Source of the DNA: Stylophora pistillata
Taxonomy: Eukaryota
Direction: 5' to 3'
Length of the DNA: 64,000 bases
NCBI RefSeq assembly: GCF_002571385.2
Contig: NW_019217860.1
Coordinates: 700,856-764,855, forward strand
The notes under the pieces are model-generated. The model was not told where the DNA came from. It did not search any database and was given only the letters and a program-made list of their open reading frames with translations. Of this stretch, positions 5,371 to 40,818 are shown one piece after another. The position numbers were made by a program, and so were the translations under genes. The first letter of the stretch is position 1, and every line of letters begins with the position of its first letter.

Positions 5371-5607
5371 AAATGAAGTTCATATATATATGCACTTCAT
5401 ATATTCATTGTATCTCACGAATTGTTTCTTTCACGAATCAACTTAACGGCCTGCTCCCAGTTGACTTGTTAGCTCAATTGGTAGAGCGTTGCACTAGTAT
5501 CGCAGAGGTCAGTGGTTCGAGCCCGTACAGGCCTGATTTTTTTTCAGGTCTGATTTTCGCTATTGCATAAATAGCGCTATATACTGCGAGGATCGTGCAT
5601 CATACGT
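5371..5607 (+). mobile_element. tRNA-derived SINE-like repeat
   Basis: tRNA-like head (tagctcaattggtagagc...ggttcgagccc) embedded in a longer body that is shared with the copies at 40511-40818. Confidence 0.75.
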
Positions 5608-20023: not shown

Positions 20024-23000
20024 TCACACGGCACCGTTCTCACTTTTCTCCTGATGTTTGTGCTGAGCCAGTGCTGCTAGTCTCTTGTCTCGTAAATTCC
20101 TTCTCTCATTCAGTTGATCTAAAGGAATGCTTTCATTGAACGCCTTTTCAATCTTGTCCAAAGTAGCACCAGCTAATTTCCGCGGTCCTCCTTCTTCTTC
20201 GCACACACGCACAATGTTTTCTCCGTACCTCTCACAGTAATCTCTGATTCCTAATGAATAAACATAAGATCACATATGATGAAAAATGACACGATATGTC
20301 CAACAAGTCACGATTGGTTTTTCTATTTTCTCTGACTGGCTGAGAAAGTTGCGCGACTTTCCTTCACAACCAGTAGACAGTAATGAAGAAATGCTAAGGA
20401 CGTATTTCTTTCGACACACAATTTAAATTTACCACCCATATGACCCGAACAATCCCGCGGGCTTTTGGAAAAGATTATGAGAAAAATATCCTTATGAAGC
20501 CCGTATGCGGGAACACCATATAGGCCGGAAAAAGCCGTGCGGCCTTTTGAGATGCGAGCTGAAAGGATAAAGGAAGAAAGAGAGAAAGTGGCGGTCACGA
20601 GAAAATATTTGGCTCTCGTTCATGAGGTACGGACGAAGCGCATGGCCTCGAGCCAAATATTTTCCCTTCCGGCCTTCCCACTCAGGCAATAGGTACATAT
20701 GTGCGCACGTACGTGCCTAGGTATGTTCGTGCGTATTTGCGTGGGTGCGTATGTGGGGAATTTGGTGGCCTAGAAAAATCAGCAACAAGGAGCTTTGGAG
20801 ACAAACAGGGCGGCGTCCGATAAAGCAAGAGATAAGACAAAGAGCCTGGGGCTGGATCGCCCACACATTGAGGAAACCAGATGGACATGTAGTCAAGAGG
20901 GCACTGGAGTGGAACCCACAGGGGAAACGAAAAAGAGGGAGACCCCAGCACACCTGGCGACGTACAAGAATTGCAGAGTTAGAGAGGAAATATCTCACGT
21001 GGAATGAGGCAAAGGGTACTGCACAAAGTAGGGTTAGGTGGCGCGTTCTAGTTGAGAACCTATGTTCCACTAGGAACGAAGAGGAATAAAGAAGAAGTAG
21101 GTGCGTACGTACGTACGTGCGTGCGTACTTATGGGTGTGTGTACGTGTGCGTTCGTGCTCTTCGCGTACCTCTGCCCGATTCCGCGCACCTCCGCCCGAT
21201 TTTGATCAATCTACGTAAGGACCGATCGGCTTCAAGACATATTTACCCGTCAACTCAGTCAAACAACAGTATTAACCTATATAAAATCTCTGAAAAATTA
21301 AAGAGAAAAAAACACACCATTGGCATTTAGATGCATAGTTTCAAATGGACCAATCAGAGCGTAACGTAGTCCAAGACCATCTGTCACTGCTGTTTCGATA
21401 TCTTCAGGTGTACAAATGCCATCCTCAAAAAAGGAAAAAATAATATATTCTAAACAGCGTCAAACCACCGTGACGGTTTTTTAAAAGCAATCAGTTGGCA
21501 TCAGGCTTTCTCCAGACGAGGTTTGACTTGATAAAATAAATATCCTTCCACTTTTGGGTTTTGGCATTTTTTGATGCTGTTCACAATAATAAATATTCCT
21601 ATAAAAGGTTCAGCTACAGTGAAGAATGTTTAGGACGCGGTTTTGTTGGCTATGACGTTTTTCCAACTAATTACTACTCTACACGCTGCTACCTTAGTAA
21701 AGAAAAACCAATGCAATTTGAGATCACTTCCCATGCTCATTTCATAATTACTCTAACTTGTTGTGAACATACAAAAGTGCTTGGAGGTAACAAAACTGAC
21801 GTAATTTCTACGTTTATGTCACCCTTGAGCCAGTCACACCATTACAAGGGAAAGTCATATCACTAATAGATAAACCCCAAAAATTAACTGAGCCATTTTG
21901 ACCTGCAGTACACCAATCTTTCTTGTGGATTGTGACTACCTTCTTTCATCACTTTTTACCAGACAGTGCTACTTCCAGCTTACCCCCTCCCCCACCGCAA
22001 AACACCCATCACCTACCCATCCCATATGCAAAACTTCCTTATACCTCCACCAATCTCCAAGACTCCATGATAACAGCATACTGCAAACGATTCAAAACAA
22101 ATCCATTCACTTCTTTCTTGGTTACCACAGGTGACTGGCCAATCTGTTTCATTAGAGCGACTGTCTGGTCTGTAACTTTACTGTCTGTCCAAGGAGCAGG
22201 AACAACCTCCACCAGTGGTACATAATATGGAGGGTTTATCTGATAATTGCAAAACCAAAAATAACATCAATTGTAAATCTTGCTAAAAGTAATTGTGCTT
22301 ATGCAGTGCAGTAAGTTATCTCCAACCTCTGAGAGTGATTGCATCTTATTCTCCTTGCAGCATCACTGTTAATTCAAATGTAAACGTCATGAGAATAAGG
22401 AAAATGATCATCCAAAAGAGACGCTCTTGTTGTTAATGGCTCCGTTGTATGGTCACCCTTCACTGCCAGATATATCATGACTTTGGAAAGAGTGCAACGC
22501 TGAGCTACAAAGTTTATTTTATTTTTTGAAGATGGCTATGATGCTTGCAACTCTATGCTTAATCTGCTGTCCTTGGAACACAAATGATTTCTTTTTTGAT
22601 GTGTTATTTTTTTTAAAAAGTTTTGAATGGTTATGTTGACTTTAACATCTCTTCAACAGTTCCGTTTTATTCTGATACTGCTAGGTACTCTATGAGAGAG
22701 AAAGATGGACTTACTTTAAAGGAGAATTATGCCCTTACAAACACTTTTAATTGTGATGAAATTTTGTGGGCCGAGGCCAGGAACGTGTTCGATAATTGAG
22801 TCAGTTTGCTAGACATAACGTCTCGTAGTCACGTTCGACGCACTAAAAACTACTATAAAACGAATACAAGAATTGTAAAAACGTGTAAAATGGTATATAA
22901 AAAGTCACTTGTAAAAATGTAGCGGAATTCCAAATCGATTTCGATCAATTACGATCCTCATCAGTAGTACTCCGCCATGTTTAAAATACTGAGTATTTTA

Positions 23001-25664
23001 AACATGGCGGAGTACTACTGATGAGGATCGTAATTGATCGAAATCGATTTGGAATTCCGCTACATTTTTACAAGTGACTTTTTATATACCATTTTACACG
23101 TTTTTACAATTCTTGTATTCGTTTTATAGTAGTTTTTAGTGCGTCGAACGTGACTACGAGACGTTATGTCTAGCAAACTGACTCAAACACTTTTAAGTTT
23201 AGTTTTTTAATTGTATTGTTGATATGTGGATTCACTTTCATTTTCGATGATATCAGTGTCTAGTATCTCAAGTTTTAAGCATGCTGTGAGGAACTTCTTA
23301 ATGAATCCCACCTACACTGGTAAAATTACTGAAAACTCATTGTCACACATTTTAGAATTTTTGTATCAGATTTTAATTAATTATTAATATTAATTATATA
23401 ATTAAATCATATTTCCCAACTATATATTTAGTTAGGTGGTCTGTCTGAAGATGGGATCTTGGACTCTTTTACAGACCATCCTTATGGCATTTCCTTTGTT
23501 ATAAGTAATTATTTTATAATCTTAATTACCAATAAATTGTAATAAATAAATAAATAAAAACAAATTCAGTACTGATAGAAATATATGTAGAGCAATATGA
23601 AAAATATGCATTACTAATCTTAGAGGGTAAAGCAGTAAGGTCCTAATAAAGCTTTCATACTCACTGGATGGGCTACAATACACTGACTGCGATGCTTCAA
23701 AGCTTCCGTGAACTTCGACGGCACTATACAGGATGTGGAACTAGCTAATATCACATCATCAGAAGTAATACTTCTATCCAAGTTTTCAAAAACTTTTTTC
23801 TTGAGGTCAAGATTTTCTGGAGTACATTCCTAATCCAAAATAAAATACCAACACAACTTAAATAAAAATGCTATTGATGAATATACATCTAAAGTATACA
23901 TTTTTCAATCAAAGAGGTTTTATTCATCAATAATCATTTAATGATATTCCATTGAATTATACCTGGACATACATGGCTCCATCCAATGCCTTTACAAGGT
24001 CGTCATAGCTGGTAACTAACTTAAACGCCTCCTCAGCGGCCATGCCTGGACAACGCATTAACCCTTTTATCTCCATATCATGCAGCTGGGACTCAATACT
24101 TGTCAATGCATTAGTCAGTTGACTGGCTACCGTGTCATACAATGCAAAATTGAAACCAGCACTGGAGAAAATCTGTCAAAAAGGCAGGATTTAGTGAGAT
24201 TTTGTCTGAGGTACCAAGTGACTCAAAGTTATCTAATTTTTTAACAATCACTAAAATTGTCAAAAAGTGCTAACTGTGCCATTACTACTTACCACAGACC
24301 AAGATCTTCCTATCAAACCACTCATGAAAGAAAAAAGACAAATGAGAAATGTAGAAGCACATCAAGTTCTAACCTTTCCTACTGCTACATCCATAACCTT
24401 TGGACATTGTTATGTTTGACCATACAATTTCATTTTAAAAAAATTAAGCTTTACACTTTATCATCATTAGTTAAATTTGGAAGGGCACGTAGGGATCTAT
24501 TATCATTTTTAACATATAATGAACAAAGTATGATTTGTCTGATTGGTGCTTTATCAGGTTATAGCGCCTGCATGTAACTAGTTACATCAAAAAAGCAATA
24601 GAATGCATTTTTCCAGCATTTATTTGAGCAATAGAACAAATTTTTCCAAGCACTATGATGGGATAAAGCCATGCAGGACGTTGGAAGAATACCAGGAAAG
24701 CTTATAAACCACATGCCTTTGGCTCACAATTTACAAGCTTCCTCGTGTTCTCCCAAACAGGTTCTATAAGGAGATTTGTCACCTTATAGAACCTGGAAAA
24801 AGGTGTTTTCTTGCCTAAATCTACCCTGCAAGCAGAGCGCTAGCCTTTTCTTCTTCTTTTTAACCCTCCAAGGGAAAAGGCTCTGCCTACATCCTGTTGT
24901 TGCTTTGAAATGCTGAAAGCCTAAAACTCTGGGCTTCTCAAGCTGGTTTTGCCTCCAGTCAAACCGGTTTTGGTGCACACACCTTTGTTTTTCATATAAA
25001 CAGATGACCAAATCTGTGCACACAAATGGAACCGGAACCGGATATAGTTCAAGGGGGCATGGAAAAGGATCAGTTTCTAGGCAACTGCTGCGCATGTTCA
25101 AACGAGCAACAACAGGGTGTCGGCAGAGCCTTTTTCCCTTTTCGATTCGAGGAAAGGCTCTGCTCACAGGGTAGCCTAAATCAGGTCTTTTACAAAATTA
25201 TACTGCACCTAGAGGTAACATTTTCACACCCACATTTGACTAATTTCACAACACACACAGGTGATCATGATAGATAACCTTCTTTGACAGAAGGTGTCAT
25301 GATGTTGACAACAAGCTCCATAGGACCTTACAGAGCCACTTTCCAGTGTGCTATTACTTACTAGAGTCACACACAAATTGACCAATCACTTTACAGGAAA
25401 TGGACCATGATTCCAAATAAATTTTGGATAGTGACAATCAGTGTTCATGGTGAAAGAGAGCTAAAAGTGACAAACAATTTTTTGTCTAGATTCCAGGTTA
25501 ACTTTTGAAACCAGAATGGTTAAATTTTGTGTTTACTTGCTGAGCCAGGAAAGAGTGATCATACAGAAAATGGCCGTGCATTTTGCTTTCAAAATGATTG
25601 GCACAGTTTATAAAACCCACCTGCCAATGATGGCGACTTTTCCTTTGCTGTTTGAAGTGGCCAT
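20024..25664 (-). CDS. CRYL1: Lambda-crystallin homolog / L-gulonate 3-dehydrogenase, 324 aa; exons 25664-25621, 24320-24293, 24172-23963, 23829-23665, 22239-22045, 21423-21318, 20250-20024
   Basis: Spliced translation reads [22 protein letters not shown]...YVQECTPENL...LASSTS...[14 protein letters not shown]...GFVLNRLQ...[10 protein letters not shown]. All introns are GT-AG with consistent phases. Confidence 0.95.
20750..21100 (+). mobile_element. RTE-clade LINE 3' fragment in a CRYL1 intron
   Basis: [13 protein letters not shown]...WIAHTLRK...[19 protein letters not shown] is a typical RTE C-terminus. It has a GAA-rich tail and is flanked by TACG/GT-rich simple repeats. Confidence 0.85.
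22920..22977 (-). ncRNA. Mirror copy of the hammerhead ribozyme (sense with respect to CRYL1 pre-mRNA)
   Basis: Reverse complement of 23005-23062 within the palindrome. Confidence 0.8.
23005..23062 (+). ncRNA. Minimal type I hammerhead ribozyme
   Basis: Stem I tggcggagtacta/tggaattccgcta, core CTGATGA-G, stem II gatc-gtaatt-gatc, then GAAA, palindromic stem III tcga, and the U-H site at 23048-23049. Confidence 0.8.
24823..25173. mobile_element. MITE-like element
   Basis: Termini accctgcaagcagagc...gctctgctcacagggt. A related terminus lies near 39617. Confidence 0.6.
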
Positions 25665-40510: not shown

Positions 40511-40818
40511 TACGTATGATGCATGATCCTTGCAGTAGAGAGCGCTATTTATGCAATAGCGAAAATCAAACCTGAAAAAAAATCAGGCCTGGGGATTCGA
40601 ACCACTGACCTCTGCGATATTAGTGCAGCGCTCTACCAATTGAGCTAACAAGCCAACTGGGAGCAGGCAGTTGGCTTGTTAGCTCAATTGGTAGAGCGCT
40701 GCACTAGTATCGCAGAGGTCAGTGGTTCGAATCCCATACAGGCCTGATTTTTTTCAGGTCTGATTTTCGCTATTGCATAAATAGCGCTCTCTACTGCGAG
40801 GATCATGCATCAAACGTA
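40511..40818. mobile_element. Head-to-head inverted pair of tRNA-derived SINE-like repeats
   Basis: 40511-40660 is approximately the reverse complement of 40668-40818. Same family as 5371-5607. Confidence 0.8.

What the first reader, a model, noticed from the sequence alone, without database searches (positions are those of the whole stretch)
22738..23196. Perfect 391-bp palindrome carrying twin hammerhead ribozymes inside a CRYL1 intron
Seen: 195-bp arms around a single base. Each arm contains a complete hammerhead core (CUGAUGA, 4-bp stem II, GAAA, palindromic UCGA stem III, 13-bp stem I). The insert is bracketed by a 13-bp direct repeat resembling a TSD. Known: minimal type I hammerheads with a palindromic stem III occur in the terminal repeats of Penelope-like retroelements and cleave as dimers, and these elements often leave inverted termini. 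Inference: this is a young non-autonomous Penelope or retrozyme-like insertion. Either strand yields an RNA holding a ribozyme and its own antisense, so it would form a long dsRNA hairpin that self-silences cleavage of the host pre-mRNA and could feed RNAi or ADAR editing.
Basis: partly seen in the sequence, partly recalled or inferred. Interest (0 to 1): 0.8.

Follow-up and report, generated by a model that had tools for sequence, protein, structure and literature searches.

The report
Head-to-head truncated Penelope element insertion
The perfect 391-bp palindrome is a very recent, dead-on-arrival double insertion of the last ~195 bases of a coral Penelope-like retrotransposon, two copies joined head to head; this is a known habit of these elements, and each copy carries the family's small hammerhead motif.

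Summary
Arms 22796-22990 and 22992-23186 are 195 nt, 100% complementary, around one base. A 13-bp duplication flanks the insert, and each arm has a complete minimal hammerhead motif.

It is an ordinary, if neat, product of a young Penelope-like element (PLE) family in a coral genome (closest named proteins: Stylophora pistillata).
- The genome holds 88 copies of the element's 3' end, and 25 head-to-head pairs are visible among them.
- Longer copies encode a telomerase-like reverse transcriptase with a C-terminal GIY-YIG/CCHH nuclease.
- The window's insert (22751-23183/6) is two 5'-truncated 3' ends in opposite orientation.
- A paralogous uninterrupted site holds the 13-bp target once, which confirms the duplication.
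- The hammerhead recurs in four related PLE families at about 50% protein identity, with covarying stems, although Rfam misses it.

The two ribozymes lie on opposite strands, so any transcript carries one ribozyme plus its antisense. That transcript is predicted to fold into a 195-bp hairpin. Cleavage, RNAi and ADAR effects are untested.

The read-level check could not be run.

One new point: across 22 measurable pairs the two arm lengths are strongly correlated, which suggests the two cDNA syntheses are coupled.

The parts
22738..22750 (.). Left copy of the 13-bp target-site duplication (CAAACACTTTTAA)
   Evidence: Direct repeat D3, 13/13 identical. Paralogous uninterrupted copies of the host repeat carry this stretch once, for example C4:1089050-1089061.
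22751..22795 (-). 45-nt PLE 'tail': the extreme 3' end of the minus-strand copy, present at this end only
   Evidence: The same 45 nt follow ...GACTCAA in many other copies genome-wide. The partner end of each pair lacks it. It matches the published 30-40-nt one-sided tail of PLEs (PMC8557442, PMC11167929).
22796..22990 (-). Left arm: minus-strand, 5'-truncated copy of the last 195 nt (before the tail) of the PLE, including a hammerhead motif at 22920-22977
   Evidence: It is 100% identical to at least 22 other genomic copies.
22991..22991 (+). Centre base G. It is templated by the element (the longer copy reads TG just 5' of the arm), so the plus copy is 196-197 nt and the junction has 1 nt of microhomology (T22990).
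   Evidence: BLAST mapping to a longer copy: the plus copy maps to 22990-23186 and the minus copy to 22751-22990. The junction 31-mer is unique in the genome.
22992..23186 (+). Right arm: plus-strand, 5'-truncated, untailed copy of the PLE 3' end. It ends at ...GACTCAA and shares CAA with the target.
23005..23062 (+). Minimal type-I hammerhead motif: stem I 23005-17/23050-62, CUGAUGA 23018-24, bulged G 23025, helix II 23026-30/23035-39, GAAA 23040-43, palindrome AUCGAU 23043-48, predicted cleavage after U23049
   Evidence: Parsed. Model R1 scores 49 bits here. The same motif recurs in four relatives with covarying stems. Rfam is negative.
22920..22977 (-). Mirror-image hammerhead motif of the minus-strand copy (CUGAUGA 22958-22964 on the minus strand, predicted cleavage after 22933). 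This is the copy that is sense in the host pre-mRNA.
23184..23196 (.). Right copy of the target-site duplication. Its first 3 nt (CAA) are shared with the end of the arm.
22436..23555 (.). Older interspersed repeat that was the target. It is split by the insertion into 22436-22750 and 23184-about 23555.
   Evidence: More than 40 genomic matches at 67-88% identity. In C4, C787, C1508, C719 and C1026 the two halves abut with a 12-13-nt overlap, which is the empty site.
22114..22239 (-). Downstream host exon (3HCDH_N profile positions 138-178)
   Evidence: C77:722969-723094, minus strand.
23659..23829 (-). Upstream host exon (3HCDH_N profile positions 84-139). Together the two exons place the insert in an intron of about 1.4 kb.

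Best explanation
The palindrome is a single, very recent integration event of a Penelope-like retroelement (PLE; canonical type with a C-terminal GIY-YIG nuclease and a Neptune/Nematis-like CX4CxxC linker).

Shown:
- Two 5'-truncated copies of the element's 3' end lie head to head.
- The minus-strand copy is 195 nt plus the 45-nt tail (22751-22990). The plus-strand copy is 196-197 nt without a tail (22990/1-23186).
- They are joined with 1 nt of microhomology and flanked by a 10-13-bp target-site duplication.
- The insert sits inside an older repeat, in an intron of a 3HCDH_N-domain gene.

Inferred mechanism:
- The PLE protein cuts both target strands, and both 3'-OH ends prime reverse transcription. 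One starts at the RNA's 3' end (tailed), the other at the internal start site just upstream of the tail (untailed).
- The two cDNAs stop at nearly the same point on the template.
- Their 3' ends anneal and are filled in.
- Identical arms therefore need no homogenisation. They are sister cDNAs of one young family.

Consequences:
- Each arm carries the family's minimal hammerhead as cargo.
- At this locus the ribozymes are almost certainly inert. Each transcript holds one ribozyme and its perfect antisense and should fold into a 195-bp hairpin.
- No function is implied. The likely effects are an unstable DNA palindrome and an intronic dsRNA.
For: Family and copy number:
- 88 element 3' ends occur in the genome. 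40 of the 42 scored arm matches are 95-100% identical to the window's arm over most or all of its length.
- 25 minus/plus pairs are visible.

Coding capacity of longer copies:
- They carry an 813-aa open frame with DKSG, RT motifs A, B and C (YVDD), CX4CxxC, VTY-CxxC-YVGE and CCHH.
- The AlphaFold model has pLDDT 88, and its top Foldseek hits are telomerase TERT (6zdq, 3du5, 7qxb).

End structure:
- One end of each pair has the 45-nt tail and the other stops at CTCAA. My tally is 26 of 28 pairs.
- Every pair checked has its own 8-13-bp duplication.
- Paralogous empty sites show the window's 13-mer once.
- Junctions show 0-4 nt of microhomology or 1-10 nt of filler, and are often centred on natural palindromes.

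Arm lengths:
- They are correlated. 7 of 22 pairs agree within 2 nt, against a permutation mean of 0.86 (P<5e-5).

Hammerhead:
- It is conserved in four related families (L041, L044, L042, L048), placed about 100 nt before the ORF start or after the stop.
- 7 of 10 pairs change on both sides; 85% of cells pair, against 62% when shuffled.

Literature:
- Inverted 5'-truncated copies, a one-sided 30-40-nt tail and hammerheads in pLTRs are described in PMC8557442 and PMC3846280.
- Dual minimal hammerheads 100-700 bp apart on opposite strands are described in PMC4209133.
- Both strands are cut and extended in vitro, and the tail lies between two RT start sites, in PMC11167929.

Folding: hairpin MFE -355 to -363 kcal/mol.
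Against:
- The assembly breaks this family with N gaps elsewhere, though not in this locus.
- The window's insert has no ORF, so its family assignment rests on identity to longer copies.
- The RT is weak at the sequence level: Pfam RVT_1 E=0.08, GIY-YIG 20.1 bits against a 22.6 cut-off, and the PDB sequence search was negative.
- Ribozyme activity was not measured, and Rfam is silent.
- The two-ended priming step is inferred. In vitro, no strand difference in start site was seen, whereas here the tail is almost always one-sided.
Confidence: 0.87

Rival explanations
1. Same element and same event, but a different mechanism. A single target-primed cDNA folds back on itself or switches template onto itself (self-priming), and copies itself back to make the second arm.
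For: - Many junctions sit on natural palindromes of the element: ACGT in L094, GGAATTCC in L098, AAATCGATTT in L100.
- Centres are only 0-28 nt in 13 pairs.
- L099 looks like a 4-bp AATT snap-back with a loop of about 14-18 nt.
- Self-priming was proposed for rotifer PLEs (PMC3846280).
- It would explain the correlated arm lengths.
Against: - A copy-back strand should reproduce whatever its template has at the outer end, giving two tails or none. Yet 26 of 28 pairs have exactly one.
- It predicts that the tailed (first) arm is never the shorter, but the untailed arm is longer in 10 of 22 pairs.
- A 1-nt centre, as in the window, is sterically impossible for an intramolecular hairpin primer without later processing.
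Confidence: 0.3
2. Assembly or library artefact: an inverted chimera or a collapsed repeat, not present in the animal's genome.
For: - The assembly handles this repeat family poorly, with N gaps at the same element position in several loci.
- An apparent 2.5-kb 'perfect palindrome' in L033 was only N against N.
- Reads could not be examined.
Against: - There are no Ns in or near the locus.
- The 13-bp duplication is exact and is validated by paralogous empty sites.
- The one-tail asymmetry and the junction type match more than 20 independent loci, each with its own duplication.
- The centre 31-mer is unique and must have come from reads.
Confidence: 0.05
3. One reading: the twin-ribozyme palindrome is an active unit. 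It would be a non-autonomous PLE or retrozyme, or a domesticated hairpin-RNA locus, whose dsRNA regulates ribozyme cleavage of the host transcript and feeds RNAi or ADAR.
For: - The hammerhead motif is intact and its family is conserved.
- A 195-bp perfect hairpin is predicted in the host pre-mRNA.
- PLE-derived small RNAs are known in rotifers (PMC3846280).
Against: - The exact structure is unique in the genome, so it has not been propagated as a unit.
- There are no direct-repeat ribozymes, so no retrozyme-like excision or circle is possible.
- Other pairs have arbitrary arm lengths, many without the ribozyme.
- Single minimal hammerheads showed no cleavage in vitro (PMC4209133).
- With 100% arm identity and an exact duplication, the insertion is too young to show selection.
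Confidence: 0.05
4. A DNA transposon or MITE made of two 195-bp terminal inverted repeats.
For: Inverted identical ends plus a target-site duplication; many genomic copies occur as minus/plus pairs.
Against: - Arm lengths differ from locus to locus, from 21 to more than 1500 nt.
- Interiors are two opposed copies of an RT-nuclease ORF, not a transposase.
- The ends are asymmetric, with one tail.
- The duplication length varies from 8 to 13 bp.
Confidence: 0.01

Closest known systems
Canonical EN+ Penelope-like elements with an adjacent inverted 5'-truncated copy and a one-sided tail (Penelope of Drosophila virilis, Pen2a_Av of Adineta vaga, Neptune/Poseidon; Evgen'ev & Arkhipova 2005, Arkhipova 2006, PMC3846280, PMC8557442)
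   Same: - RT plus C-terminal GIY-YIG with CCHH
- head-to-head inverted copies from one event
- optional 30-45-nt tail on one end only
- variable target-site duplication of about 8-13 bp
- hammerhead in the terminal repeat
- palindromes or microhomology at the inverted junction
   Different: - Here both copies are cut down to about 195 nt, so nothing but two 3' ends remains, and the insert is a near-perfect palindrome with a 1-nt centre.
- The family is a coral one that the held literature does not mention.
- The tail is 45 nt rather than 30-40.
Minimal hammerheads of metazoan PLEs (Cervera & de la Pena 2014, PMC4209133), including 'dual min-HHRs about 100-700 bp apart on opposite strands' in Schistosoma
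   Same: - CUGANGA and GAAA boxes
- unpaired nucleotide between A9 and G10.1
- G10.1-C11.1 pair
- palindromic helix III implying dimeric action
- occurrence in truncated PLE ends on opposite strands
   Different: - Helix I here is long (13 positions) against 4-5 bp in Schistosoma.
- Helix II is short (4-5 bp) against 7-8 bp.
- The motif sits about 80 nt after the stop codon.
- Activity is untested.
Twin priming of human LINE-1 (Ostertag & Kazazian 2001; from my own knowledge)
   Same: Both target strands prime reverse transcription in one event, and the cDNAs are joined by microhomology.
   Different: L1 twin priming uses one RNA and gives an inversion of adjacent segments, not two copies of the same 3' end. 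It has no second defined start site or tail.
Non-LTR retrozymes (PMC7229834; bioRxiv 10.64898/2026.07.22.740005)
   Same: Short non-coding sequences with type-I hammerheads, related to PLE terminal repeats.
   Different: Retrozymes are direct tandem repeats whose ribozymes excise a circularisable RNA and which amplify as units. This insert has inverted ribozymes, is unique in the genome, and cannot excise anything.

Membership tests
Penelope-like element (canonical EN+) | Reverse transcriptase of the PLE/TERT lineage | tested here: met
   This was tested on longer copies of the same family (L031:3743-6181), not in the window insert itself.
- DKSG and RT motifs A, B and C (YVDD) are present and invariant across 31 homologues.
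- The AlphaFold model has pLDDT 88, and its best Foldseek hits are TERT.
- Pfam RVT_1 is only weak, E=0.08.
Penelope-like element (canonical EN+) | C-terminal GIY-YIG nuclease with two Cys between GIY and YIG, plus downstream His (CCHH) | tested here: met
   - VTY-EIKCIQC-NSVYVGE, followed by WKHCKEKH, R, E and N.
- Pfam GIY-YIG has E=8e-4 in three copies, just under the cut-off.
- A CX4CxxC linker is present, which is a Neptune/Nematis-like trait by the criteria of PMC8557442. No phylogeny was made.
Penelope-like element (canonical EN+) | Complex insertions: partial tandems and/or an inverted 5'-truncated copy, flanked by one variable-length target-site duplication | tested here: met
   - 25 minus/plus pairs among 88 3' ends.
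- Pair-specific duplications of 8-13 bp.
- A partial tandem in L038.
- The window's duplication is verified against empty paralogous sites.
Penelope-like element (canonical EN+) | Optional 30-40-nt 'tail' present at one end only | tested here: met
   A 45-nt tail lies at 22751-22795 and is absent at 23187. The same holds in 26 of 28 pairs.
Minimal (PLE-type) type-I hammerhead ribozyme | Conserved core: C3 U4 G5 A6 N7 G8 A9 ... G12 A13 A14 A15.1 ... U16.1 H17 | tested here: met
   CUGAUGA at 23018-24, GAAA at 23040-43, U23048, U23049.
Minimal (PLE-type) type-I hammerhead ribozyme | Unpaired nucleotide between A9 and G10.1, and a G10.1-C11.1 pair | tested here: met
   G23025 is unpaired, and G23026 pairs with C23039. 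Both features are invariant in the five families compared.
Minimal (PLE-type) type-I hammerhead ribozyme | Very short helix III with palindromic sequence (dimer formation) | tested here: met
   - The helix III sequence is AUCGAU here, ACUAGU in L044, AAUAUU in L048, UCAUGA in L042, and imperfect ACUUGU in L041.
- The sequence changes between families but stays palindromic.
- The cofold calculation predicts intermolecular pairing.
Minimal (PLE-type) type-I hammerhead ribozyme | Helices I and II supported by compensatory changes | tested here: met
   - 7 of 10 pairs change on both sides.
- Covariation score is 0.56 against 0.16 shuffled (0/500), and slid controls reach at most 0.25.
- Caveat: there are only 5 distinct sequences, and the alignment was fitted to the model.
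Minimal (PLE-type) type-I hammerhead ribozyme | Self-cleavage at H17 | not testable with these tools
   - There is only an anecdote: the untailed copy in L017 begins exactly at the nucleotide after the predicted cleavage site.
- Two junctions lie within 5 nt of the site, but those sit on the natural palindrome GGAATTCC.
- This is not significant on its own.
Rfam hammerhead families (searched as part of the whole Rfam 15 library) | Score against the curated covariance models | tested here: not met
   - There is no hammerhead hit at E<=10, even on a single 106-nt arm.
- I infer this is because those models require a helix III hairpin.
- The miRNA hits are generic responses to a perfect hairpin, all below their gathering scores.
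Retrozyme (non-LTR, animal) | Direct tandem repeats, each with a sense hammerhead, delimiting an excisable unit that amplifies | tested here: not met
   The two motifs are inverted, and the structure is unique in the genome.
TIR DNA transposon / MITE | Fixed-length terminal inverted repeats, a fixed-length duplication, and a transposase in autonomous copies | tested here: not met
   Arm lengths vary from 21 to more than 1500 nt, one end carries a tail, and the interiors are opposed RT-nuclease ORFs.

The most novel reading that the evidence does not exclude
In this young coral PLE family the two halves of head-to-head insertions are not independent.
- Almost every pair has exactly one tailed and one untailed end.
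- The two arm lengths agree within 2 nt in a third of pairs, with either arm slightly the longer.

The most novel reading is that both cDNAs are made in a coupled way. One enzyme would start at the RNA 3' end and the other at the internal site 45 nt upstream, on one RNA or within one dimeric particle. Both would then stop at the same point and pair through their 3' ends.

If so, perfect palindromes such as the window's would be direct footprints of the still unsolved PLE integration mechanism. They would also be in-vivo evidence of a strand-specific use of the two start sites, which the in-vitro system did not show.
Probability: 0.35. Interest if true: 0.5.

Novelty: new member of a known kind. 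Interest (0 to 1): 0.25.

Why it matters
For the genome it matters little. It is one more dead transposon fragment in an intron, although a 391-bp perfect palindrome is a potentially fragile DNA site and a source of intronic double-stranded RNA.

For the field, it adds a very young and apparently still active Penelope-like family in a reef coral, mislabelled in public annotation as 'Ty3 Gag-Pol' or 'hypothetical'. The family has dozens of near-identical insertions whose junctions, tails and duplications are still intact. That makes it a clean natural dataset for the unresolved question of how these elements build their tandem and inverted structures.

It also shows that Rfam's hammerhead models miss the minimal Penelope-type ribozyme.

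Tried and rejected
- **Rfam on the region, on a single arm and on the whole window**. No hammerhead hit. The sub-threshold miRNA and sRNA hits are generic matches to any long hairpin.
- **TIR transposon or MITE reading.** Suggested at first by the minus/plus pairs. Rejected once the interiors proved to be opposed RT-nuclease ORFs and the arms variable.
- **'Perfect 2.5-kb palindrome' in L033**. Rejected as N against N. The N runs were left as they are.
- **PDB sequence searches with the ORF and with a 31-sequence profile**. Nothing significant. Structure prediction plus Foldseek was needed.
- **Own-genome search with the hammerhead model**. Only this family scored well. The tool scores just 150 of about 113,000 candidates, so it gave no view of other families.
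- **The look-up of sequencing runs**. I did not try another route.
- **Second batch of genomic copies**. About 20 further 3' ends remain unexamined.
- **Exact search for the centre 31-mer in JGI metagenomes**. 0 hits, uninformative.
- **Protein atlas on one host exon**. Only 3HCDH_N. CRYL1 orthology is left open.
- **Hint that truncated copies start at the ribozyme cleavage site**. One exact case, and the neighbouring cases are confounded by the natural palindrome GGAATTCC. Recorded but not claimed.
It is a different sequence with no match to my pattern or model.

Full report
**1. The observation**

The repeat finder reports arms 22796-22990 and 22992-23186, 195 nt each, 100% complementary, with one base between them. 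It also reports a 13/13 direct repeat at 22738-22750 and 23184-23196.

Each arm holds a hammerhead-like motif. On the + strand:
- CUGAUGA at 23018-24
- an extra G at 23025
- helix II at 23026-30/23035-39 (four Watson-Crick pairs plus one G.U, loop UAAU)
- GAAA at 23040-43
- the palindrome AUCGAU at 23043-48
- U17 at 23049
- a 13-position stem I at 23005-17/23050-62, with one A.A mismatch and three G.U pairs

The mirror motif lies on the - strand.

Two corrections apply. A 45-nt non-palindromic stretch (22751-22795) separates the left repeat from the palindrome. The right repeat shares its first three bases with the arm.

The core boxes alone are not beyond chance (2 found, 0.7 expected per window). 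Rfam gives no hammerhead hit even on a single arm. The sub-threshold miRNA hits are what any perfect hairpin produces.

**2. What it belongs to**

The arm is a repeat. 40 of the 42 scored matches in the window's own 398-Mb assembly are 95-100% identical over most or all of the arm. An exact-pattern census finds 88 copies of the element's last 24 nt.

Most copies occur as minus/plus pairs at variable distances. The sequence between the arms of the longer pairs is two opposed copies of one ORF.

The longest open copy is L031:3743-6181, 813 aa, cut off upstream by an assembly gap. It shows:
- a weak Pfam GIY-YIG match near its C-terminus (E 8e-4, reproduced in three copies) and a faint RVT_1 match
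- 403 homologues, the best full-length ones 1040-1090 aa at about 50% identity
- invariant DKSG, RT motifs A, B and C (YVDD), a CX4CxxC linker, VTY-CxxC-YVGE and downstream His, R, E and N residues, which together form the CCHH-type GIY-YIG nuclease peculiar to Penelope-like elements (criteria in PMC8557442)

An AlphaFold model built on the 31-sequence alignment is confident (pLDDT 88.3). Its best Foldseek matches are telomerase catalytic subunits, followed by Prp8, LINE-1 ORF2p and group II intron RT.

The nearest named proteins are from Stylophora pistillata at 98-100% identity, annotated 'hypothetical' or 'Ty3-G Gag-Pol'. I infer that the genome is that coral or a very close relative.

**3. 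Anatomy of the insertion**

I aligned the outer ends of all copies. The element ends in ...GACTCAA, followed in many copies by a constant 45-nt extension.

In pairs, one end has the extension and the other stops at CTCAA. My tally over searches is 26 of 28 pairs with exactly one tail. If tails were independent with frequency one half, this would have a probability of about 1.5e-6 (my calculation).

Each pair checked has its own 8-13-bp duplication.

In the window:
- The tailed copy is on the - strand (22751-22990).
- The untailed copy is on the + strand.
- Mapping to a longer copy shows that the + copy also includes T22990 and G22991. The centre base is therefore templated and the junction has 1 nt of microhomology.

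For mapping only, I used the L031 plus-strand copy with the 45-nt tail appended as a coordinate ruler.

The flanks belong to an older repeat. In several paralogous copies (C4, C787, C1508, C719, C1026) the left and right flank matches overlap by 12-13 nt. The C4 copy reads straight through with a single copy of the 13-mer, 12 of 13 bases identical to the window's. This serves as an empty-site control for the boundaries and the duplication.

The insert lies between two exons of a 3HCDH_N-domain gene on the - strand, at 23659-23829 and 22114-22239. Whether that gene is CRYL1 was not established.

**4. Comparison with published work**

All of these traits are described for Penelope-like elements:
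- heavy 5' truncation
- an inverted 5'-truncated copy abutting the main copy
- a 30-40-nt tail, often at one end only
- variable duplications
- a hammerhead in the terminal repeat (PMC8557442; PMC3846280)

Cervera and de la Pena describe dual minimal hammerheads 100-700 bp apart on opposite strands, attributed to truncated PLEs (PMC4209133).

The only in-vitro study found that the protein cuts and extends both target strands. It also found that reverse transcription starts at two adjacent sites whose spacing equals the tail (PMC11167929).

The window's palindrome is thus the extreme, minimal form of a known architecture. I found no paper in the held library linking Stylophora with Penelope elements or hammerheads.

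**5. Is the hammerhead real?**

The four features that Cervera and de la Pena list as non-random are all present:
- a nucleotide between A9 and G10.1
- the G10.1-C11.1 pair
- palindromic 15.2-16.2
- families with compensatory changes

I fetched contigs encoding homologues at about 50% protein identity and found the motif at the equivalent place:
- in L041 and L044, about 100 nt upstream of the ORF and again 94-138 nt after the stop
- in L042 and L048, upstream of the ORF
- in L043 and L046, as degenerate versions

Across five families the helix II and helix I sequences differ but stay complementary, and the helix III hexamer changes while staying palindromic. On a model-fitted alignment, 7 of 10 pairs change on both sides. 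The covariation score is 0.56, against 0.16 shuffled (0/500) and at most 0.25 in slid controls. There are only five distinct rows, so this is supportive rather than conclusive.

Activity is untested. Published minimal hammerheads of this type were inactive as monomers and weak as dimers.

**6. What it does here**

ViennaRNA predicts that either transcript of 22700-23240 forms the full 195-bp hairpin (-355 and -363 kcal/mol). The isolated 66-nt ribozyme region folds at -21.8 kcal/mol.

The host gene is on the - strand, so the pre-mRNA carries the antisense arm first and the sense, tailed arm second. The ribozyme's complement already exists when the ribozyme is made.

No transcript contains two sense ribozymes, so the dimer cannot form in cis. 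I therefore regard the ribozymes at this locus as inert cargo.

A long perfect intronic dsRNA and a DNA palindrome with a 1-nt centre are plausible substrates for Dicer or ADAR and for palindrome instability, respectively. That is inference from general knowledge.

**7. How the palindrome arose**

I could measure 22 head-to-head pairs. Junctions show 0-4 nt of microhomology or 1-10 nt of filler, and several are centred on natural palindromes of the element (ACGT, GGAATTCC, AAATCGATTT).

The two arm lengths are far more alike than random re-pairing gives. 7 of 22 agree within 2 nt against a mean of 0.86 (P<5e-5), and 4 of the 13 pairs with an arm longer than 100 nt do so (P=1.5e-4). The window (239 against 241 from the 3' end) belongs to this symmetric class.

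Simple fold-back self-priming, proposed for rotifer elements, explains the symmetry. It does not explain the one-tail rule, nor the 10 pairs in which the untailed arm is the longer.

I favour priming from both target strands, about 55 to 30 over fold-back. One priming would be at the RNA 3' end and the other at the internal site, with the two cDNAs ending together and pairing through their 3' ends. This step is inferred.

**8. Caveats**

- The assembly inserts N gaps into this family at a recurrent position. Structures above about 800 nt are therefore unreliable, and one apparent giant palindrome was spurious. The window locus and the short pairs contain no Ns.
- Twenty further copies could not be fetched.
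- One untailed copy (L017) starts exactly at the nucleotide after the predicted cleavage site. This is a single case, and nearby junctions are confounded by the GGAATTCC palindrome, so I make no claim from it.

**9. Verdict**

The 'non-autonomous/retrozyme' and 'twin ribozyme' readings are not supported. The regulatory consequences are untested.

It is a new member of a known kind. It is of low general interest, with some value for specialists as a clean dataset on PLE integration.

Noticed in passing
G000:C77:688163-688356 (L040:1364-1557), about 12.5 kb upstream of the window: A different palindromic insert: 80-nt arms at 93% identity with a 34-nt spacer. It contains a near-hammerhead (CCGACGA ... 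CGAAACGUC, with C in place of U4). It is not related in sequence to the window's element and is not matched by my model R1.
   Followed up: partly
window 22436-22750 and 23184-about 23555: The intron is largely an older interspersed repeat of about 690 bp, with more than 40 genomic copies at 67-88% identity. A second, shorter repeat of about 110 nt lies at window 22325-22436, with many copies at 75-85%. Neither has been classified.
   Followed up: partly
L007, L016, L028, L033, L034 (element position about 842 nt from the 3' end): Assembly gaps (1 N up to hundreds of Ns) begin at exactly the same position of the element in at least five loci. This suggests a branch point between subfamilies, or a systematic assembly break. 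The Ns were left untouched.
   Followed up: partly
L017:1126-1262 (G000:C153): The 5' end of an untailed 137-nt copy coincides exactly with the nucleotide 3' of the predicted hammerhead cleavage site (it starts UGGAAUUCC...). This is a possible footprint of in-vivo cleavage, but it is a single case.
   Followed up: partly
L101 (G000:C7:567037-567098 and 570529-570590): Two identical mini-insertions (29 nt of tail joined to 34 nt of untailed end) lie 3.5 kb apart in direct orientation, probably inside a larger duplicated segment.
   Followed up: no
L043:4760-5744: In a related metagenomic contig, the PLE is followed by an integrase/chromodomain ORF (rve, Chromo), which is an LTR-retrotransposon neighbour. 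This may explain why a Stylophora gene model fuses this PLE with 'Ty3-G Gag-Pol' (P0003).
   Followed up: no
window 5463-5534, 40585-40654 (-), 40673-40745: Three tRNA genes pass Rfam's gathering score. Two of them form a divergent pair 19 nt apart.
   Followed up: no
G000:C3237:190-723: An intronless 303-aa open frame with a full-length 3HCDH_N match (189 bits) sits on a small contig. It may be a bacterial contaminant or symbiont sequence in the assembly.
   Followed up: no
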